This document shows, one piece after another, positions 96-8,631 of a stretch of 64,000 nucleotides of DNA. The DNA comes from Zygnema circumcarinatum SAG 698-1b (taxonomy: Eukaryota > Plantae > Zygnematophyceae). The DNA is taken from NCBI GenBank assembly GCA_037447605.1, contig CM074809.1:1168689-1232688 (forward strand), given 5' to 3'. Both the position numbers and the translations under genes were made by a program. Within the stretch, counting starts at the first letter, position 1. Every line of letters starts with the position of its first letter. The notes beneath the pieces were generated by a model, which saw nothing but the letters and a program-made list of their open reading frames with translations, was not told where the DNA came from and ran no database searches.

Positions 96-1902
96 AAAAG
101 GTTGAAATTAGATTTCCGTGGCAGTGTGAGGATGAGCCAACCATTGGCATCAGCACTGGAACGCCTTCTGGAGCCAATCATTGAGGACCGTTTCCAGGTA
201 TTCAGTACTGTAGTTGCTGCTCCTAATCTGCTTCACTCCCCTCCCAAGTATTGGGCTTTCTCTTGCTTTGCAAAGCCATTCCAGATTAAATTTATGTGCT
301 ACCCCCATTTCTCGACAGCACCTCAGCTCTTCCAAAATTTTGCTCCTTATACCTCATTTTTTTTTCTCATCTACGCTCATACTTGTGTGGGTGACAGTCA
401 GCAGCACAGGCAACGGAGGCTCTCAAAGAAATACTTGTTGGCAAAATTGCCGGTGGTGAAGTTCAGAGAAGTGAGCCCATATTTGAACTCGGTCGAGTAA
501 AGCGACCGACGGGAACAAAAGTGGTGAGAACTGCAGGCATTAATGTATTTGTTAACTTCGCCCTGTCTTCTTGCACATGGACTTTAGCCGTTGACTGAAA
601 CCACTCAGTCAGTTTATGGTTCAGATGATGGAGAAGAACAATGCGGAGCTGCTTATCAGCATTCCTCCACGAGGACTCACAGCGGAGACTGTAGGAAGTG
701 GGACATTTGCAGTGGTGGGTTGGCCCTCTTGCCAGTCAGTAAATATGCTAATGTCCTAAAAAACCAAAATTCCCCTTCCACTCACTGCATGTGTTTCCCA
801 TAGCAGATACTTAGTGCTGAACTTCTTTCTTAAACAACCCCAATAAGCTGTCCACTGGATGCAGGCATTCTCTCTGATTCGACCACAGTTGAGCCTTTGA
901 GATTGATTGTTTTGCATCTTGTGCTGTTTGATGTTCAGGCATGGACTTCATTTGTTGGGTTTTGGACCGCTAGTGCTTTCACTGCGGGAGCTCCGCTTCT
1001 CTTCACTGCTTTCTCAATCCCGTTTTGGGCTGTGGGTGGCGGGTACAAAGCCTTACCTTCTTTGCTTGTTCTGAATTTAGACACTCCATTGAAGCCTGTG
1101 CATGAAAGATAAACTTCGTCTATACACATAAGCTTTGGGTTTCATTCGTTAGGGCAACACAGCTCACACTACTGCATTTGGGAAATGACATGCGGGCAAT
1201 TTTTCTTGACTATGATAGCCAATGGTAAGATTTGATTCTAGTTCGAACTGCGGTCTTCTCCTGACTATGCCACGTTACCAATTGCAGATTACTTCGTCAG
1301 GTTGTAAGCAATATAGCTGTTTCGGTTGACATGCGGATTGAAAAGAACGGCCGGTTCAGCATCGACTGGCATCTCGGAAGTATTTGGAAGCACAGGGTGG
1401 AGGGGCGAACCAGTGACATCAGCAGTGTACGCGTACTATCGACCGGGGTATTCCTCTCTCTCTCTCTCACTCCCTTACCATTTCGTTCTGTTGCAGATAG
1501 ATGTGGTGGGATTCCATTCTTTTTGCCGAATGCCGGATGTGCTGCATCTGTTTTAAAAACGTTCTTGACCTCCACTTCCTCTCGTTCGCAGTGATTCCTC
1601 CGTCTGCTTCGTTCCCCTCCATCCTGTGGTCTCTGCCTCTCCATAGCCTCCTCTTTTCTGTTTTCATCAGTTTCTCGTATGTGATGTTTGCTTCTTCTCT
1701 ATGGCTGTCTCCACAGACGGAGAATGGGCGACCCATCACTGTATGCGAGGTCCTTGAGGGCGTGCGCAGTCACTTATTTGGAGGAGGACTGCTCCTTGTT
1801 GAAGAGGAGTGGCTTGTCAGTGAACTCGCCGCCTTCCTCGGTTTACCTTTCGAGCCCTTCACTCCTCCAAGGATCGTGCGTTCGTCTATGGATGATTGGT
1901 GA
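96..1902 (+). CDS. 3' portion (multi-exon, 5' end outside window) of a cyanobacterial-type Ser/Thr protein kinase with a C-terminal membrane domain
   Basis: Exons spliced by hand at GT/AG: 96-197 KRLKLDFRGSVRMSQPLASALERLLEPIIEDRFQ, then SAAQATEALKE..KRPTGTKV, then NNAELLISIPPRGLTAETVGSGTFAV, then AWTSFVGFWTASAFTAGAPLLFTAFSIPFWAVGG (hydrophobic), and a last exon ..EEEWLVSELAAFLGLPF..DDW* ending at 1902. The 'LERLLEP..DRFQSA.EAL' segment resembles a kinase subdomain XI tail. The following modules resemble the C-terminal part of cyanobacterial Pkn2-type kinases (from memory). The catalytic core is not in the window. Confidence 0.55.
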
Positions 1903-2249
1903 GAGGACAAGTTTGTAAATTTTTCAGGGCCGCTAAAATTTGTCTTGTAAATAGCCATTTCCAGTGCCTGTATAGTTTATTTGCCTCTACAAAATATGCT
2001 CAGACAGCTTTTGTAGATGTTGTGAATGGAGAAATAGTATTGTGGTGGTTTGTACAGTTCGGTCGGCTGGCCGGTTAGGGTACTTATTTCAGTACAGTTT
2101 TATTTTCCGCCGGTAGTTGAAGCACGGTAAAGAATTGCTCTGGGTTGGGCTTATGATGAGAGCTGAGTGATGTCATATGTATATTTCTGTCCTCATTGAC
2201 CTTGTCTCCTTTCCCCCATATAGAGAAGGGAATGGGAGAGGGGAAATGT

Positions 2250-2504
2250 CATTGGTCTCACGATGGCGAGGCCAGCAAATGTACATGCATAAAATCAACA
2301 TGGGGAACCACGAGGAATCGGTCACAAAGGACCTATGTGCAAAAGGAAAATGCCAAAAATTGGAAATCTACTCCTAGGCTCAAAAGCAGGGGAATGGAGC
2401 AGGGAATGGAGTTGATCTCACGCATGGCCATGATGCTATCACATGGGCATGTACAAAGCCAACATGGAGAACCACCAGGAGCCGATCGCTCCTCGTGGTT
2501 CTCC
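2250..2504 (+). repeat. Two tandem copies (2250-2335, 2412-2482) of a dispersed ~85 bp repeat; the second ends in a 17-bp hairpin (2466-2504)
   Basis: Shared motif CATTGRTCTCACGATGG..CAAATGTACATG..AAAATCAACATGGGGAACCACGAGGAA. Further copies lie on the minus strand at 35933-36021 and 57777-57851. Confidence 0.7.
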
Positions 2505-2940
2505 TCGCTCTCCTTGCTGCAGCCGTTGTCCTGTTGAGCCACCGTCCTAGAGGCAACAACAAGGGAGTAAAAACAGTCCTTCTTTCATTTCTAATTTCAG
2601 TTCTCATTTGAGTGTCTGTTTTTGAGACTAAACCCATAATTTTGGATGTTATGATTTGGAATTTAGTTGGTGAGAAGGTTTTGAACCATGACGGATTTTA
2701 AAAAGCGATGTTTGGAGTGATCCATGGTATTGTCGATGGAAATGAGCTGGAGAGTTTGGTTGGGATGTACAAGGCTCGGGTCATTGGATGAGTAAAAAAC
2801 GGAGGAGAAAGCCTCCTGCCTAAAACTCCTTTATAACAAGCTTCCCAACTCAAGCCCCCATAAGCCTAAGCCACGCCTCAAACTGCCATGGCCTGCCACA
2901 CACATAAAGAAGGTTACTAACTGTCACACCCACTCCTCAC

Positions 2941-3243
2941 TATATAATGTGGGGCTCCTTGCCTCAAATCACGGCACACCCTGCCGAATGCCGGACCATG
3001 CATGCGACAACTTTATTCAACAATCCTTATCTAACTTATCTAACTAGTTTGTGTTTGACTTCGTCCATGCACGTTTGATGGTTCATCATCGCCATCGTGC
3101 CACATCCTCTCTCCTTCGTGTCGTGCCATGCACAGTAATGCCCATGCCGCCGTCCTAGCCCTAGTGACCATGCATGCACTCTAGCGCACATGCCGCCGTC
3201 CTAACCATCCATGCATACATGCCTCCATCCATCCATGCATGCA
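2941..3243 (+). promoter_or_regulatory. Putative promoter of the RLR-CTD-like gene: TATA box (TATATAA 2941-2947) followed by a cluster of RY (CATGCA) motifs
   Basis: TATATAA at 2941. CATGCA at 2997, 3066, 3127, 3169, 3173, 3210, 3234 and 3238. Confidence 0.4.
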
Positions 3244-3427
3244 AGCACTCATGGCCACGGCGATCGGCGCCTCGCTGGCCCGCGAAAGCGACAGCGAGCG
3301 TTGCGTTTCGTTGCGTGCCGCCGGGAACGCGAGAGCGTGCGGCCAACACATGAGAGGATGGGGGAGGAAGTGTTTCCTCTCAAGAGCCGTCCCTACGCTC
3401 TCGCCTCCTCGCGGTGCGCGGGCAGCC

Positions 3428-3790
3428 ATGGCGGACGCCTACTGCAAGAGCTGCGGAGGCGTGATCTGCTCGTCCTCTCTCCTCTGCTTCTACAAGCAGC
3501 CCGATCCGGCGGTGAATTCATGGCACCTCGCAGTGAAACCGGAGGTGCAGTTCAGCGTTGCATCAACAATTTCTGTGGGGCCTAATCCGGACCCGATCAG
3601 TTCAATCTACAATCCCGGCAAGCTGTTCTGCAAGCTCTGCGGGGCGGACGTGGGAAACGTGAGCAAGATCAGCTCCAATGAGGAGGAGTGGTATTGCTTT
3701 GGGTGCCGCAAGGTGAACCTCGGAGGTGCTCCGAGTCCGCACTGGCGCAAAGTGGCGTGGTTGTACCCTGAAATTGAGAGAATACTTTAG
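3428..3790 (+). CDS. Intronless 120-aa zinc-binding beta-tent protein most similar to the RIG-I-like receptor C-terminal (RLR CTR) domain; Mis18/Yippee fold is the alternative
   Basis: Start context gccATGG. Sequence: CKSC-GGVICSSSLL..WHLAVKPE..YNPGKLFCKLCGADVG..WYCFG..HWRKV. The two CxxC pairs, the His after the first pair and the terminal W-x-x-V follow the RLR CTR pattern as I recall it. Confidence 0.65.
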   Translation: MADAYCKSCGGVICSSSLLCFYKQPDPAVNSWHLAVKPEVQFSVASTISVGPNPDPISSIYNPGKLFCKLCGADVGNVSKISSNEEEWYCFGCRKVNLGGAPSPHWRKVAWLYPEIERIL

Positions 3791-4365
3791 CATTCGGTGG
3801 AGGAGCTGCCTGAAAGGATTTGAGGTCAGTGAGGTCATATTAGAATGAGTGGATGGCAGGTCGGTGCAAGCAGAGGGGTCAGAGCGTGAGCATTACGCGT
3901 CTAGGGTTTGTAAAGTAACGATAGGGGCTGAGCTTCCTCGAGTACGAGGAGTGGGCTTTCGTGAGCCTGTACAAAATGTACATGAACCTTTTTGTTGCCT
4001 TCGCTGGAGAGACTTGTGAATAGAGCATCATGTGAAGCAATGAAAAGACATAGAAAAGCAAATGGAGCAGTCGATGCATTCATGGGCGTGGCCTCGTTTG
4101 TCACCCTCATGTCCTCCCCTTTGTACTCAAAACACCAAAGTTTATTGCTTTCATCACACCTCCCACACGAAAGCAGCAAAAAGAGGATCTCCACCATCAT
4201 TTGCAATTCTTCTTCTGCTCAGAGATGTATATGTGAAAGGTTCTGACGGTTCCATTATACACGAGTTGCCCAAATGGTACAGCTTAGGGCAATTTCTCAA
4301 CCCATTTCACCTCACTGGAGCTAGAAACACAACACAACGACAACATATACACAACACCATCTCGT

Positions 4366-6625
4366 TCAGGTTTCCAGAATCTCCTTCACGCAGTTGCTGA
4401 TGAACTCCACATCCGCTGGGTTGCGCCCTCCACAGCTCGCATGGCCGTAGATGCCGGGGATGACTCGCAGCTCCGCATTCGGAATGAAACCTACTTCAAA
4501 TCTTTGATGTGCCACAGGGAAATAGAGGTCCAGTTCTGATCACCCCCCAAAAGCACCGACTCTCAGACCATTGCTGTTGCGTGGCCCAACCAGTAAATAA
4601 TCAATTAATTAATTAATTAAGTAAAGAAAAACTTTTCTTCGGTCTTTTTTAAAAACACAGCTTTACATTCCGGTTCTTCTTGCTTTATGGATCCATAACG
4701 TCCGCTCGGCTCACCTGCAGGCATAACAATAGCTTTCGCTTTAATTGAGGCAAGTGCTTTCTCCACACTTCCTTCATAGCCAGGCGTGAGCCCAACGTCC
4801 CCATGCTGCCATGTCCAGATCATAGCCAAAAGGTTGTTCGGGTCCTGATGGAGAAATTGGCCCTCATAAGCGACAGTAATCCAATCTTCCAAGCTTGTAA
4901 ACCCCAGTTTTCTCCACTCCTGCGGGGCACATACAGACAATCAAAACTTGATCAAATCACATCATCATCATTTTTTATTAAAGGTTTTTCCGACAGCTTA
5001 GTCCGCAAATGTGTTGATTATGTTTAGCTTTGATTTTGCGCTCCAGCAAAGACCAGTTCTCGACTTATGTCTCAACTCACTTCTTTCAGACAATCGTTCA
5101 TGTCTGTCAATACGACTTGCTTGCCGTCCATCCATTACTTTTCTTGTGATATTCCATCAAACTAGACATTCCTTGCCTTACTCGTGAAAGAAGGAGTTCT
5201 GAAACCTCCTTGACTGAACGGAGCTGGAGGGTGCTTGTCTGCTTTTTGAATTTGAAAAATGACTTACCTCCTGCCAATAAAACTCTTGGCTCATGCCCCA
5301 GCCGGCCCATACACGAGCCATGGCCCGAAGACCAGTTTCTGGTTTTTCATCATCCGAATACCACCCCCCCTTAAAGGCTGCATCCGCAGTCAAAGCCGCC
5401 TTCACTCCCTCCAAAAAAACCTGCTCATGCATGGGCAGAAGGTTCGAAACACTTTTTGAGTAGTAAGTACAAACACAATGGAAAAGCTGACGATACCTCC
5501 AGTGGTTGCATTGCCGCTTAGATGGAAACATTGAACAAACTGGCTCCAATAGCATGGAGGGCTGCAAAAGAAAGGAGAGGAAGATAAAGTGGACTAACAT
5601 AGTTGTGCGGACTTGTTTTTGCGGAACCGCACCATGGTGCAATACGCTGGACCATGTCAGGGTAGCTCACTGCCCATTGATAAGTTTGAAGGGCACCCAT
5701 GGATCCACCCAAAACCAAGGCCACTGCCTTCACACCAAATTTCTCGGTCACTAACTGGTGTTGAGCACGAACATTGTCGATGATGCGCACCTGCAGAGTC
5801 CGCAATACTGAGAAGACGTGAGTCAGGAGAAAATTGGAATGAGGGGTGGGGTGGGGTGGGGTGGGGTGGGGTGGTGTGGGACGGGCAGGTCGATCTAATC
5901 CCTTGACCCCTAAAGGGTGAGGAAAGGACAAAGTGTGAATTTGAACGGAAAAGAGCTTGCGGTGTAGTAGCGGAAAGACGGATATTGCACGATTTCGAGT
6001 TCAATACAGCATCTATTGTCCATGCATCATTACTTGGAGAGTCGCAGAATCTGCCACTTACAGGCGGGAAGCGCGCTTTATTGTAAGGCGGAGGGAAATT
6101 GCTCGGAGACGAGGATATGCCGTTGCCAAACATATTACACACAACAATAAAATACTTTGTTGTGTCCAAAGCCATGTTCGGGCCGATCATCCATTCTTCC
6201 TCATAATGCGGAGTGGCATACATTGTTGGATAAACGATTAAATTATCCTTCTTCTCGTTTAAGACGCCCCAGGCTTTGTATGCGAGGCGAGCCCCCCGCA
6301 GAGTTGCGCCTTCTGTGAGCGTAAAGTTCCCGAGGTCAAAGTACTCGCACTCCCTTTGCTCTTCTGCAAACCCGTGCATTCCGTCCTTCATCAATCACCC
6401 ACTCCTCTTTTCCCCTTGCAGAATTGCAGACCTTTGAAATTTGGAGAAGCTTCTTGTAGGGACGGAGGGCTTGCTTCGTTGAGTGTAAGAGCGCATATAT
6501 GAGGAATGTACTTTTGAAAGAGATATCGCAGAGGGGGGCAAACGAGAGAGCGCATCCTTCTCACCTGGAGTCTGCAGGCGGGGGTCGAACAACAGCCCCT
6601 CCACTCTGCCCTGCGCGGCAGCCAT
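4366..6625 (-). CDS. Homoserine O-acetyltransferase-like (MetX-family) alpha/beta hydrolase, bacterial-type subfamily, 6 exons; in-frame upstream ATGs (to 6856) could add a transit peptide
   Basis: The spliced product contains FDLGNFTLTEGATLRGARLAYKAWGVLNEKKDNLIVYPT, NMFGNGISSSPSN, the nucleophile elbow GGSMG, CGSAKTSPHNYVFLEGVKAALTAD, the acid motif LDLYFP and the His motif IPGIYGH..GG. Stop at 4366-4368. All introns have GT..AG ends. Confidence 0.85.
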
Positions 6626-6669
6626 GGCTCTCCCTTGCTGAAGAGTGACCGGAGGAGTCCTGAAATCTT

Positions 6670-8631
6670 GCGCCACTGGAGTGAAAAAGGCGCCATCCCC
6701 CTGCCTCCTCCCTCGCAGAGCTTTCAGGCCAGGCCATGGCTGCCGAGCGAGGGACGCGACGACGGGCCGGGCGGGGAAGGGAAGGCGGGGACACATGCCA
6801 CAGTTACGTTCAGTCAGCGTGAGCGCATGGAGACAGTTAAGCGTTAAACCCTCCAACAGTCGTCCAAGCCCTCCGGAGTGTCCCTATTTGTTGCCAGCTA
6901 TTTGTCCATTCCTTTTAGTCAAACCAATTGACCAAGCTAACTGACTAGATCAGGCTAGAATCTATATATCCCTATCGTCTATATCCCTGATCCTTTTCGC
7001 TATTACCTTCCTGGAAGGGAATACCAACCGGGAGTTGAAGCGGAGATAGCCTTTTTGGACATCTCCATCCTCATAAATGTCAAATGGCAAATTTTTCTTT
7101 TATTGCTGCCTTTGCCAAATCGTAATACCATGCTGACTGGTTTATCTTTGACATTGACATTCCTAGATAACCTTCAATTGACTGTTGTATGCGGACTTTG
7201 GTGCGTACATCACCAGCATCCTGGACATGGGTTCCCCGTTCCACATAATTGAGCATCCGCTGTCTTTCGTCAGGAGTGATCTTGGAACAGTCCTTTATGA
7301 CGTGAGTCTGCGTGGTCCTGATTACCCCACTCAACAAACACGAACAAAATTTGCATTCACGGATCCAATGGGTCTTTGATCTTAGGAATTTCCTAGGATG
7401 TTTGGCACATTCCACTAAGGAGGTAGCGACAAAGATCTTGGCAGGAGGTCGTCCTATACTTGTCCTGGGGAGAAATTGACACTGCCTGTCACCACCGCAA
7501 CTTCTGTTGTTCTTGTCGTTGTCATTCCCCTCCCCTCCCGCTTCCTCCATCTCCTCCTCCACCTCCTCGTCCCTCTCAGCATAGTCAATGTCGTCATCGT
7601 CTTCTTGTGCCTGCCTCGAGCCTCCTCCGGTCCCCTCCATGATCCCCCCCGCCTCTCGGCGGCGAGCCCGAGCGCGAGCAGACAGAGTGAACCAGACGGA
7701 CGCATTTCGCAACGCCAACGCCAAAACGACCTAATTTTGGACCGTACGAGTACGGTCGTACGGTCGTACAATACGTACGATACGATACGATACAATACGA
7801 AACTATCCGATACGGTACTATCCGAACTAGCCGTACGAGCTGTAGTAGCCGTTACGGGCTCGAATTTAAACTCTCCGAATTTTCCCGCCCTTGCCGCCGC
7901 AAGAGGCCACCATAGTGTCAGTTGCCGCGATACGATACGGTACGATGCGGTACGATATACCAGCAAATGATACGATACGATACGATACGAACGAACCTAC
8001 ATGAACTCTAACATAATTCCGCTCGTCTATTGGTAACACAGACCTAATATTTGCCAAAAACGATATTTTCGCCTGATATTCGCTAAAACCAGGTGGAAAA
8101 TATGATGGGGTCCTAGTGTATATTCGTGGTCGGAAATGTACGGCATCCTTCCGGTTCCGTTGAGTTTAAGCCCGGTCCGGACCTCTACTCGCCAATTAAA
8201 ACCAGGAACGTACGATCCAATTGACATGACACGTGTACAAATCTCTACACGTGGCATTGGACAGTGGACAAGGCCCGACGCCGCGTGTGCAGCCGTTTAA
8301 CGGTCGATCTATGTTAGCGTGTTCTATGGAAATACGGGGGCAAGGCAGACGCAATTTTTAGGGTTTCGACCTTTTTTTTGTAAAATAAAATTTGCCCGAC
8401 GGAAAAAGGTGTGTATCGATTCCAAAGGTGTGAAGAAAGCATTTTCCCGTTTATGAACCTTTTTAAAATCTGCCTGGCGGAAAAGGCGTGTGTCGATCCA
8501 AAACAGTGGTGGATTTATCACTTTCGTTTTAAAACCCTAAAGTCCAACACAGTGTCCGGAGTACGGTGGCCAGAAGTCAATAGGGGGAGTCAGACCTTGA
8601 CCATCGCCCGCGGAATTGAACGATTCCGCCG
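6670..8631. repeat. Copy 1 of a ~1.96 kb near-identical tandem duplication
   Basis: Matches 8642-10609 (offset 1972, then 1978 after a 6-bp insertion GTGCCT in copy 2 at ~9623). The copies are separated by 10 N. Confidence 0.95.
6956..8010 (-). mobile_element. Truncated hAT-family DNA transposon (5' end with subterminal repeats plus N-terminal transposase fragment)
   Basis: The ORF from ~7640 contains a BED-type finger (HWIRECKFCSCLLSGVIRTTQTHVIKDC). A 1-bp frameshift near 7085 restores LPFDIYEDGDVQKGYLRFNSRLVFPSRKVI, which resembles the hAT 'LPF..VE....F......P..PSRKT' segment. Dense TACGA/TACGG subterminal repeats at 7744-7990. The outer end reads TAGAGTTC on the minus strand. No DDE core. 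Confidence 0.75.

What the first reader, a model, noticed from the sequence alone, without database searches (positions are those of the whole stretch)
3428..3790. Stand-alone, intronless RIG-I/MDA5 C-terminal-domain-like gene in a plant-lineage genome
Seen in sequence: a 120-aa ORF with CxxC-x4-C..H..(YNPGKLF)CxxCGxDxG..C..W-R-K-V. Established knowledge: RLR CTDs are Zn beta-tent domains that bind dsRNA ends or 5'-ppp RNA, normally fused to a DExD/H helicase in animals. Plants have no canonical RLRs, and Yippee, Mis18 and cereblon-CULT share the fold. The conserved WG appears here as VG. The lack of introns in an intron-rich neighbourhood suggests retroposition or recent acquisition. Inference: a possible helicase-free RNA sensor or decoy, or a divergent Mis18/Yippee protein.
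Basis: partly seen in the sequence, partly recalled or inferred. Interest (0 to 1): 0.7.

Follow-up and report, generated by a model that had tools for sequence, protein, structure and literature searches.

The report
Detached RIG-I-tail-like zinc domain gene
A freshwater green alga related to land plants has a small, transcribed, intron-free gene for a zinc-binding domain shaped like the RNA-end-sensing tail of animal RIG-I antiviral receptors. In other organisms the same domain forms the front end of giant helicase-RNA-copying enzymes of RNA silencing, and here it stands alone without its usual basic RNA-end loop.

Summary

Evidence that it is a real gene:
- Codon-position GC is 0.50/0.475/0.725; the flanks show no such pattern.
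- Unspliced RNA contigs cover 2979-4072 in three runs from two studies. Strand is not shown.

Identity:
- Pfam's best match is RIG-I_C-RD (24.0 bits, cut-off 25.6); Yippee-Mis18 is weaker.
- An AlphaFold model built with 11 homologues (pLDDT 93) aligns end to end with LGP2, RIG-I, MDA5 and DRH CTDs (Z 11.5-13). Mis18 and cereblon rank lower.

New context: its only sequence relatives are the N-terminal domains of 2200-3400-residue proteins built as CTD-like domain + Dicer/RLR-type helicase + RdRP + nucleotidyltransferase. These include Mesotaenium and Riccia, so the plant lineage does pair this domain with an RLR-type helicase. The 64-kb window holds no helicase or RdRP, so this copy stands alone.

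It keeps the zinc cysteines and a KWK-like HWRK motif. It has lost the basic beta5-beta6 loop, which binds 5'-triphosphate in RLR and DRH-3 CTDs.

I read it as a detached accessory or regulator of RdRP-based silencing with changed RNA-end binding. Function is inferred. Retroposition or recent acquisition is not supported. This is a new variant of a known domain kind, of moderate to high interest.

The parts
3428..3790 (+). Complete coding sequence of the 120-residue stand-alone RLR-CTD-like zinc domain protein (stop included)
   Evidence: ORF. The start codon lines up with the N-termini of the homologues. GC3 is 0.725 against GC1/GC2 of 0.50/0.475. The AF2 model has pLDDT 93.4.
3443..3454 (+). 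First zinc knuckle, C6-x2-C9, on predicted strands beta1-beta2
   Evidence: C6 and C9 are at least 90% conserved in the family. RLR CTDs carry a C4 zinc site on beta1-2 and beta6-7 (PMC8464030).
3584..3616 (+). beta5-beta6 loop (residues 53-63, N-P-D-P-I-S-S-I-Y-N-P), the topological equivalent of the 5'-triphosphate-binding loop of RLR/DRH-3 CTDs; not basic here
   Evidence: Strands 48-52 and 64-68 in the model. Over residues 48-67 the window ORF has 1 K/R (K65), whereas 25 of 29 relatives have 4-10. The loop's role comes from PMC8464030.
3629..3640 (+). Second zinc knuckle, C68-x2-C71, on predicted strands beta6-beta7
   Evidence: C68 is invariant and C71 invariant or nearly so in alignments A1/A2.
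3740..3751 (+). H105-W106-R107-K108, counterpart of the family's K-W-(K/R/S) motif and of the RLR 'KWK' RNA-backbone motif
   Evidence: W106 is at least 90% conserved in A1, and the A2 consensus reads KW. The KWK motif's role comes from PMC8464030. The residue-level equivalence to RLRs is inferred, not superposed.
2979..4072 (.). Transcribed, unspliced stretch that contains the ORF; strand not determined
   Evidence: RNA-assembly contigs: X3 2979-4072, X5 3223-3993, X2 3004-3387 and 3405-4535. X1 has none although the neighbour gene is 287 deep there.
3127..3250 (+). CATGCA-rich direct repeats in the putative leader or promoter; they supply most of the 18 upstream ATGs
   Evidence: Repeat families D1-D3; list of upstream ATGs.

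Best explanation
Window 3428-3790 is a real, expressed, single-exon gene of a Closterium-like zygnematophyte alga. It encodes only a zinc-binding beta-tent domain of the RIG-I-like-receptor C-terminal-domain (RLR CTD) type. [quoted passage not shown] In those enzymes the domain keeps a basic beta5-beta6 loop and a KW(K) motif, the two RNA-contact elements of RLR and DRH-3 CTDs, so it most likely holds an RNA end or backbone for the helicase-RdRP (inferred). The Closterium protein keeps the zinc ligands, the core and a KWK-like HWRK motif, but has replaced the basic loop. I therefore infer that it no longer clamps a 5'-triphosphate. It would act instead as a small trans-acting accessory or regulator of RdRP-based RNA silencing, either by binding RNA backbone or another kind of end, or by competing with or partnering a helicase-RdRP. 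Homology, fold, stand-alone status and transcription are shown. Zinc binding, RNA binding and the silencing role are inferred.
For: ORF and motifs. Coding signature: GC 0.50/0.475/0.725 by codon position, none in the flanks. Transcription: unspliced contigs 2979-4072, 3223-3993 and 3405-4535 in runs shown to be RNA by five GT..AG joints in the neighbouring gene; depth is independent of both neighbours, with X1 at 0 against 287. Homologues: 12 hits at E <= 1e-3 and 6 at <= 1e-10 among 1.84 billion representatives, all informative ones being N-terminal domains followed by a helicase. Full-length examples are Mesotaenium ME000353S05912 (3411 aa) and Riccia KAL3700286.1 (2642 aa), built as N-domain + helicase + RdRP PF05183 + PF22600. 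The helicase is of Dicer/RLR type: AtDCL1 3e-52, RIG-I 3e-40. The N-domain sits at the N-terminus in oomycete, cnidarian, dinoflagellate, chytrid and flatworm members. It reaches the Pfam RIG-I_C-RD cut-off in three members: 28.7, 26.6 and 27.6 bits. Fold: pLDDT 93.4. The top 42 Foldseek PDB hits are all RLR/DRH CTDs. VIA-align gives Z 13.0 for LGP2, 12.8-12.9 for RIG-I 805-919, 12.2 for MDA5 and 11.5-11.8 for DRH-1/3, spanning model residues 1-120. In the Atlas, TM is 0.67-0.70 to RLRs against 0.59 for Mis18. Stand-alone status: tblastn with four helicase-bearing relatives hits only 3425-3781 in the 64 kb, and a convergent gene starts about 400 nt after the stop. Conserved core retained. Basic loop lost: 1 K/R against 4-10 in 25 of 29 relatives. 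Roles of the loop and the KWK motif: PMC8464030.
Against: The strand of the transcripts is unknown because only contigs were available. If transcription starts near 2979, the leader carries 18 upstream ATGs, which would hamper translation. No orthologue closer than 43% identity exists in the searched collections, so purifying selection on the stand-alone form could not be measured. Its branch is long, 1.25 against 0.48 for its nearest relative, which also fits relaxed constraint on a relic. The window ORF itself falls 1.6 bits short of Pfam's RIG-I_C-RD cut-off. Profile and single-sequence searches against PDB sequences find no RLR, so the RLR link rests on Pfam profiles and on a predicted structure. 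Whether this genome also has a full helicase-RdRP gene is unknown. No RNA or zinc binding was measured.
Confidence: 0.6

Rival explanations
1. Relic first exon. The ORF is what remains of a former full-length helicase-RdRP gene after rearrangement or partial duplication. It is still transcribed at a low level but has no function of its own.
For: The branch is long. The family's basic loop is lost. Depth is low, 9-20 against 100-290 for the neighbours. There are many upstream ATGs. No orthologue of the stand-alone form was found.
Against: The frame is intact and ends two residues after the family's I-E-x-R boundary motif. All zinc ligands and core residues are kept. GC3 periodicity is strong and confined to the ORF. 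The model is confident. No decayed helicase sequence lies downstream.
Confidence: 0.2
2. Gene fission. The alga's helicase-RdRP gene has lost its own N-terminal domain, and this small protein supplies it in trans as a stoichiometric subunit with the ancestral RNA-holding function.
For: The domain is cis-linked to the helicase in nearly all relatives. The ORF stops exactly at the domain boundary.
Against: The basic loop kept by the cis-linked versions is lost here. The rest of the genome could not be searched, and earlier notes on this genome mention no helicase-RdRP gene.
Confidence: 0.1
3. Helicase-free RNA-end sensor or decoy that still binds 5'-triphosphate or blunt dsRNA ends.
For: The RLR CTD fold is complete. 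A KWK-like HWRK motif and K65/K69 near the second knuckle are kept.
Against: The beta5-beta6 loop has no K/R, net domain charge is +1 and pI is 7.5, whereas most relatives have pI 8.1-9.5. In RLR/DRH-3 CTDs this loop makes the triphosphate contacts.
Confidence: 0.07
4. A divergent Yippee/Mis18 or At4g08330-type beta-tent protein, unrelated to RNA silencing.
For: Pfam Yippee-Mis18 scores E 1.6e-3 for the ORF and matches 5 of 11 and 7 of 20 family members. Atlas feature hits to PF24046 At4g08330 clusters score 0.87-0.88, below the tool's 0.9 level.
Against: The exhaustive sequence search returns no Yippee/Mis18 or At4g08330 protein; its informative hits (10 of 12) are helicase-RdRP N-domains or fragments of them. 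RIG-I_C-RD is the stronger Pfam match in every count. Structure matches to RLR CTDs are clearly better. No member matched PF24046 at E <= 0.1 or 0.01.
Confidence: 0.03

Closest known systems
C-terminal (regulatory) domain of RIG-I-like receptors and nematode Dicer-related helicases (Pfam PF11648; RIG-I, MDA5, LGP2, DRH-1, DRH-3)
   Same: The zinc beta-tent fold matches over the whole 120 residues (Z 11.5-13, 99-106 residues aligned at 2.2-2.8 A). The two Cys pairs sit on beta1-2 and beta6-7. There is a W-centred KWK-like motif. In relatives the domain is joined to a Dicer/RLR-type helicase.
   Different: Sequence identity is only 13-18%. In the relatives the domain lies N-terminal, not C-terminal, to the helicase. 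Here it has no helicase at all. The beta5-beta6 loop lacks the lysines that bind 5'-ppp. The ORF is 1.6 bits under the Pfam cut-off.
N-terminal domain of helicase-RdRP(-nucleotidyltransferase) proteins (Dictyostelium Rrp, Phytophthora RDR1, Hydra/Nematostella RDRs; here also Mesotaenium ME000353S05912 and Riccia KAL3700286.1)
   Same: This is direct sequence homology: 30-43% identity, E down to 6e-15. The conserved columns are shared (C6, C9, C14, F21-Y22, H33-L34, P38-E39, C68, C71, G76, C90, W106, I-E-x-R).
   Different: The window protein ends at the domain boundary with no helicase, RdRP or NTase. It lacks the K/R-rich loop and sits on a longer branch. The paper I read on these RDRs (PMC4791657) describes the helicase but not this N-terminal domain, and does not list plants.
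C. elegans DRH-3 with RdRPs, and the fission-yeast RDRC (Rdp1-Hrr1-Cid12)
   Same: The same set of activities (RLR-type or other helicase, RdRP, nucleotidyltransferase, and in DRH-3 a 5'-ppp-binding CTD) works together in secondary siRNA synthesis. The fused family looks like this set in one chain. The DRH-3 part comes from PMC8464030; RDRC is from my own knowledge.
   Different: Those are separate subunits, and none is a CTD-only protein.
Isolated RIG-I/LGP2 repressor domain acting in trans (own knowledge, not checked here)
   Same: A CTD without a helicase can interfere with the full-length receptor, which is a precedent for a regulatory or decoy role.
   Different: That is an experimental fragment or a domain of LGP2, not a natural CTD-only gene, and it keeps its basic RNA-end pocket.
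Yippee / Mis18 / cereblon CULT / MsrB(SelR) beta-tent proteins
   Same: They belong to the same superfold with two CxxC knuckles. Pfam Yippee-Mis18 gives weak hits.
   Different: Structural scores are lower (Mis18 TM 0.59, SelR 0.52-0.56, cereblon at Foldseek rank 43). The exhaustive search found no sequence relatives among them.

Membership tests
RLR C-terminal domain (Pfam PF11648 RIG-I_C-RD) | Score at or above Pfam's gathering cut-off (25.6 bits) | tested here: inconclusive
   The window ORF scores 24.0 bits, E 4.6e-5, over residues 5-96 against profile positions 4-86 of 117. Three homologues pass: P0012 28.7, P0034 26.6, P0051 27.6 bits. In all, 7 of 11 and 9 of 20 members match at E <= 0.1 or 0.01.
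RLR C-terminal domain (Pfam PF11648 RIG-I_C-RD) | Saddle-shaped beta-tent fold of two antiparallel sheets, superposable on solved CTDs | tested here: met
   The AF2 model has pLDDT 93.4. Z is 13.0 for LGP2 2w4r and 12.8 for human RIG-I 805-919, with 99-105 residues at 2.2-2.5 A. The top 42 Foldseek hits are all RLR/DRH CTDs. This rests on a predicted model, not a solved one.
RLR C-terminal domain (Pfam PF11648 RIG-I_C-RD) | C4 zinc site formed by Cys pairs on beta1-2 and beta6-7 | tested here: met
   C6/C9 lie between strands 4-6 and 12-14. C68/C71 lie between strands 64-68 and 74-80. All four are conserved in the family. Metal binding itself was not measured.
RLR C-terminal domain (Pfam PF11648 RIG-I_C-RD) | Basic beta5-beta6 loop that contacts the 5'-triphosphate (RIG-I K858-K861; DRH-3 K988-K993) | tested here: not met
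   Window residues 53-63 contain no K/R. Over residues 48-67 there is 1 K/R against 4-10 in 25 of 29 relatives. The loop's role comes from PMC8464030. The feature is met by the helicase-linked relatives.
RLR C-terminal domain (Pfam PF11648 RIG-I_C-RD) | KWK motif that contacts the RNA backbone | tested here: inconclusive
   The window has H105-W106-R107-K108. Relatives have K-W-(K/R/S), for example S-K-W-K in Riccia. Equivalence to RLR KWK is judged from position in the fold only.
RLR C-terminal domain (Pfam PF11648 RIG-I_C-RD) | Located C-terminal to a DExD/H RLR helicase in the same chain | tested here: not met
   There is no helicase in the 64-kb window. In relatives the domain is N-terminal to the helicase.
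N-terminal domain of helicase-RdRP-nucleotidyltransferase proteins | Significant direct sequence similarity and shared conserved columns | tested here: met
   phmmer E values run from 6e-15 to 8e-5 for 10 family members. Conserved C6, C9, C14, F21, Y22, H33, L34, P38, E39, C68, C71, G76, C90 and W106 are all present.
N-terminal domain of helicase-RdRP-nucleotidyltransferase proteins | Followed in the same gene by a Dicer/RLR-type helicase and an RdRP | tested here: not met
   The stop comes two residues after the I-E-R motif. RNA contigs run unspliced through the stop to 3993-4072. A convergent gene starts at about 4160-4190. tblastn finds no helicase or RdRP in the window.
Yippee/Mis18 (Pfam PF03226) | Score at or above the gathering cut-off (26.6 bits) and best structural match | tested here: not met
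   The score is 19.0 bits, E 1.6e-3. Mis18 TM is 0.59 against 0.67-0.70 for RLRs. No Yippee or Mis18 chain is among the first 50 Foldseek hits (top 42 RLR/DRH, cereblon at 43) or the 50 VIA-align rows shown.
At4g08330 beta-tent family (Pfam PF24046) | Match to the family profile | tested here: not met
   The family is not listed for the ORF at E <= 10, nor for any of the 11 or 20 relatives. There is only a feature-space lead at 0.87-0.88. I infer the model is in the library copy because later accessions such as PF25420 are returned.

The most novel reading that the evidence does not exclude
The pairing of an RLR-type RNA-end-binding domain with an RLR/Dicer-type helicase is not an animal invention. 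It would be an ancient eukaryotic module that was originally built into an all-in-one siRNA amplifier (CTD-like domain, helicase, RdRP, nucleotidyltransferase) and still survives in streptophytes. In Closterium the recognition domain has been set free as a separate small protein with a remodelled end-binding loop. It would work in trans as a specificity factor or brake on RdRP recruitment, making it a natural 'CTD-only' regulator of RNA silencing.
Probability: 0.25. Interest if true: 0.75.

Novelty: new variant of a known kind. Interest (0 to 1): 0.6.

Why it matters
RIG-I-like receptors are usually treated as an animal innovation, and plants as lacking them. This small gene led to three points.

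- **An older pairing.** The RLR-type C-terminal domain fold occurs, joined to an RLR/Dicer-type helicase, at the front of helicase-RdRP-nucleotidyltransferase enzymes across eukaryotes. These include a zygnematophyte alga and liverworts.
- **A gap in the literature.** The paper I could read on these RDRs describes the helicase but not this domain, and does not list plants.
- **A testable case.** Nature has produced a CTD-only protein whose putative triphosphate loop is remodelled. It could show how RNA-end recognition is coupled to RdRP recruitment, and how the sensing domain of animal antiviral receptors relates to the RNA-silencing machinery. I recall that CRISPR knock-outs are established for Closterium, which would allow a direct test.

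If the gene proves to be a relic exon, the family-level observation still stands.

Tried and rejected
- **Word-index protein search.** The ORF found nothing. The family profile found only one fragment already known, because of the tool's length window.
- **PDB sequence searches.** The ORF, the family profile and two relatives found no RLR or other meaningful chain. I therefore could not make a residue-by-residue alignment to RIG-I from tool data. My memory of the RIG-I sequence suggested a similar P-H-P-K..K motif, but I did not use it.
- **Single-sequence AlphaFold.** The model was useless (pLDDT 44).
- **Complex prediction.** The ORF against the Mesotaenium helicase (residues 120-900) gave no answer (score 0.01). 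This is no evidence either way.
- **Domain tree.** It is unresolved. Only a weak pairing with P0001 appears (80/64), so no statement on origin beyond 'nearest to helicase-linked algal or metagenomic copies'.
- **Other stand-alone copies.** P0002 turned out to be exon 1 of a helicase gene. P0005 (domain plus acidic tail, L001) and P0006 remain unresolved.
- **N-terminal extension.** The in-frame ATG at 3239 would give a 183-aa form. I rejected it as the main product because there is no codon periodicity and the homologues start at the position of M1.
- **Retroposition.** No poly(A) tract or flanking duplications.
- **Rfam.** Nothing in 1500-4500.
- **Earlier notes on this genome.** No helicase-RdRP gene is noted. 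This proves nothing.
- **Literature.** I found no paper on a plant or algal RLR-CTD-like domain, and nothing useful on At4g08330.
Full report
**1. The observation**

The + strand has an ATG at 3428 and a stop ending at 3790, giving 120 codons.
- C6-x2-C9-x4-C14
- W32-H33
- the Y-N-P-G-K-L-F stretch running into C68-x2-C71-G-x-D-x-G
- C90
- W106-R-K-V

The start context is G-C-C-ATG-G.

GC content by codon position is 0.50/0.475/0.725 inside the ORF. The in-frame upstream stretch 3239-3427 (0.62/0.68/0.71) and the 3' flank (0.45/0.60/0.40) show no such periodicity. The coding signal is therefore confined to 3428-3787. The longer 183-codon reading from 3239 is unlikely to be the product. All homologues also begin a few residues before the first Cys pair.

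**2. Transcription and gene structure**

Four public runs of the same organism label were laid on 1200-7000. They are RNA assemblies. Their contigs skip five intervals with CT..AC ends in the neighbouring gene at 4191-6739, which are GT..AG introns of a minus-strand gene.

Coverage of the ORF is unspliced:

| Run | Contig(s) over the ORF region | Depth |
|---|---|---|
| X3 | 2979-4072 | 9.4 |
| X5 | 3223-3993 | 20.2 |
| X2 | 3004-3387 and 3405-4535 (the second fused with the neighbour's 3' end) | 6.2 (first contig); second shares one contig mean (94.7) with the neighbour |
| X1 | none, although the neighbour is 287 deep there | 0 |

X2 and X3 also have a gap at 2752-2945, between this stretch and the upstream + strand gene. 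That gene's last exon begins at 1716 and its 3' UTR ends near 2620-2690.

The ORF therefore lies in its own low-level, condition-dependent transcription unit between two other genes. It is not spliced, and it is not read-through. Contigs cannot give the strand or the true start. If transcription starts near 2979, the leader carries 18 upstream ATGs, most of them in CATGCA-rich repeats at 3127-3250.

No poly(A) remnant or flanking duplication marks a retrocopy. Rfam finds nothing.

**3. What the protein is**

Pfam's best match is RIG-I_C-RD (E 4.6e-5, 24.0 bits against a cut-off of 25.6, residues 5-96). Yippee-Mis18 follows (E 1.6e-3). The word-index search found no relative.

The exhaustive phmmer search of 1.84 billion representatives found 12 hits at E <= 1e-3 and six at E <= 1e-10, with 30-43% identity. 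In the informative ones the matching part is the extreme N-terminus, followed by a linker and a DExD/H helicase that begins with P-R-x-Y-Q-x-E-L and L-P-T-G-x-G-K-T.

Two hits are full length:
- Mesotaenium endlicherianum ME000353S05912, 3411 aa
- Riccia sorocarpa KAL3700286.1, 2642 aa

Both read N-domain, ResIII/DEAD + Helicase_C, eukaryotic RdRP (PF05183), and MTPAP-like nucleotidyltransferase (PF22600). The Mesotaenium helicase is of the Dicer/RLR clade: Arabidopsis DCL1 3e-52, RIG-I about 3e-40, then LGP2, MDA5 and DRH.

A further search with its first 700 residues shows the same 2200-3400-residue architecture in Riccia fluitans, many oomycetes, corals and sea anemones, Pelomyxa, chytrids, dinoflagellates and a flatworm. 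Aligning their N-termini shows the same domain in nearly all of them.

In three members the domain passes Pfam's RIG-I_C-RD cut-off, always at the N-terminus:
- P0012: residues 3-124, 28.7 bits
- Acropora P0034: residues 7-105, 26.6 bits
- P0051: residues 18-120, 27.6 bits

Across members, RIG-I_C-RD matches 7 of 11 and 9 of 20, and Yippee-Mis18 matches 5 of 11 and 7 of 20.

**4. Fold**

Without an alignment AlphaFold failed (pLDDT 44). With the 11-sequence alignment it gave pLDDT 93.4 and pTM 0.85.

- **Foldseek against the PDB:** the first 42 places all go to RLR/DRH C-terminal domains. The first other fold, bacterial cereblon, is at rank 43.
- **VIA-align:** model residues 1-120 are spanned in every case.

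| Target CTD | Z | Aligned residues, rmsd |
|---|---|---|
| Human LGP2 | 13.0 | 99 residues, 2.2 A |
| Human and duck RIG-I (805-919) | 12.8-12.9 | 103-106 residues, 2.2-2.6 A |
| MDA5 | 12.2 | not noted |
| DRH-1 | 11.8 | not noted |
| DRH-3 | 11.5 | not noted |

- **ESM Atlas:** vertebrate RLRs give TM 0.67-0.70, Mis18 0.59 and SelR 0.52-0.56.

The domain is a complete RLR-CTD-type beta-tent.

**5. Stand-alone status**

tblastn with four helicase-bearing relatives hits only 3425-3781 in the 64 kb. The ORF stops two residues after the family's I-E-x-R boundary motif. RNA runs on unspliced for about 200-280 nt beyond the stop (to 3993-4072). A convergent gene ends about 400 nt downstream.

Apparent stand-alone relatives were checked:
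- P0002 is only exon 1 of a helicase gene, with an intron near residue 100.
- The closest relative, in locus L004, has the domain, linker and helicase start in one ORF. An intron-free domain is therefore not unusual.
- P0005, from a metagenome, has the domain plus a long acidic tail with no helicase within 1.5 kb. It stays unresolved.

**6. What is conserved and what is not**

The window protein keeps all family-wide columns: C6, C9, C14, F21-Y22, H33-L34, P38-E39, C68, C71, G76-N77, C90-F91, W106 and I-E-R.

According to the DRH-3 structure paper (PMC8464030), RLR and DRH CTDs have three relevant features:
- A C4 zinc site sits on beta1-2 and beta6-7.
- The 5'-triphosphate is bound by lysines of the beta5-beta6 loop (RIG-I K858-K861; DRH-3 K988-K993).
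- A KWK motif touches the RNA backbone.

In the model, the Cys pairs sit exactly on beta1-2 and beta6-7, and the beta5-beta6 loop is residues 53-63. Over residues 48-67, 25 of 29 relatives have 4-10 K/R (typically P-x-P-K-x-K-x-R-K). The window protein has one, K65, and reads N-P-D-P-I-S-S-I-Y-N-P in the loop. Its domain charge is +1 (pI 7.5), against pI 8.1-9.5 for most relatives.

The family's K-W-(K/R/S) motif (S-K-W-K in Riccia) is H-W-R-K here.

The helicase-linked domains thus keep both RNA-contact elements of RLR CTDs. The Closterium copy keeps one and has lost the other. The mapping is topological; I had no coordinates to superpose.

**7. Mechanism**

The fused family unites in one chain the activities that work together in secondary siRNA synthesis elsewhere. 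Examples are C. elegans DRH-3, whose CTD prefers 5'-ppp dsRNA (PMC8464030), acting with RdRPs, and the fission-yeast RDRC of RdRP, helicase and nucleotidyltransferase (own knowledge).

I infer that the N-domain positions an RNA end or backbone for the helicase-RdRP. The detached Closterium protein is intact, expressed and remodelled in the end-binding loop. It is best read as a trans-acting accessory or regulator of that pathway with altered or weakened end recognition.

Rivals:
- a transcribed relic first exon (0.2)
- a fission product that serves as a subunit (0.1)
- a true 5'-ppp sensor or decoy (0.07)
- a Yippee/Mis18/At4g08330-type protein (0.03)

A complex prediction with the Mesotaenium helicase gave no answer and counts for nothing.

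**8. Comparison with the literature**

Bollmann et al. 2016 (PMC4791657) describe helicase-RDR fusions in Dictyostelium, peronosporomycete oomycetes, Hydra and Nematostella as uncommon. They place them in RDR-gamma and discuss the helicase. They do not mention an N-terminal domain or RIG-I, and they do not list plants.

My searches found no paper on an RLR-CTD-like domain in plants or algae. Two papers merely cite At4g08330. The library is incomplete, and Pfam annotation of PF11648 on coral RdRPs already exists in databases. The family-level point is therefore 'not found described', not 'proven new'.

**9. Earlier notes of this scan**

Earlier notes call the organism a Closterium-like alga. 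They record the intron-rich MetX-like neighbour, whose introns my RNA joints confirm. They also record a helicase-less Dicer elsewhere in the genome. That is interesting because Bollmann et al. observed that helicase-bearing RDRs coincide with helicase-less Dicers. I did not test that link.

**10. Verdict**

This is a real small gene. The RLR-CTD-like fold is confirmed and stand-alone status is confirmed. The plant-lineage context is revised, retroposition is not supported, and function is inferred. It is a new variant of a known domain kind. Interest is 0.6.

Noticed in passing
P0004 (Mesotaenium ME000353S05912), P0010/P0022 (Riccia sorocarpa KAL3700286.1, R. fluitans): Streptophytes have 2600-3400-residue proteins that join an RLR-CTD-like N-domain, a Dicer/RLR-type helicase, a eukaryotic RdRP and an MTPAP-like nucleotidyltransferase. 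The paper I read on helicase-RDR fusions lists only Dictyostelium, oomycetes, Hydra and Nematostella.
   Followed up: partly
window 3127-3250: A cluster of CATGCA/CCATGCATGC direct repeats (RY-element-like) lies just upstream of the ORF. It contributes many upstream ATGs if it is part of the leader. It could instead be a promoter element.
   Followed up: no
window 2170-2363 (and joints 2432->2296, 2451->2300, 2455->2298): A stretch in the 3' UTR of the upstream + strand gene has 10-40 times the RNA contig depth of its surroundings. Several alternative back-joints with inserted letters occur there. This suggests a multi-copy or tandemly variable element.
   Followed up: no
window 4159-6739, minus strand: The convergent neighbour (noted earlier as a MetX-like hydrolase) has five introns confirmed by RNA contigs: 4536-4714, 4919-5266, 5418-5595, 5789-6059 and 6364-6564. 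Its 3' end lies within about 100-200 nt of the ORF transcript's end. In run X2 the two are assembled into one contig.
   Followed up: partly
L001 324-1289 (protein P0005, metagenome scaffold GROS21-1): A relative has the same domain followed by a 150-residue Ser/Asp/Glu-rich tail, with no helicase within 1.5 kb. It may be a second, independent stand-alone copy, grouping with helicase-linked P0003 (93/86 support).
   Followed up: partly
window 3239-3427: An in-frame upstream ATG would add a 63-residue Ala/Arg/Ser-rich extension that looks like a transit peptide. It has no codon periodicity, so it is probably a GC-rich leader.
   Followed up: partly
window 3322-3411: An imperfect 37-nt inverted repeat (73% complementary, 16 nt apart) lies directly upstream of the start codon. 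It could form a leader hairpin.
   Followed up: no
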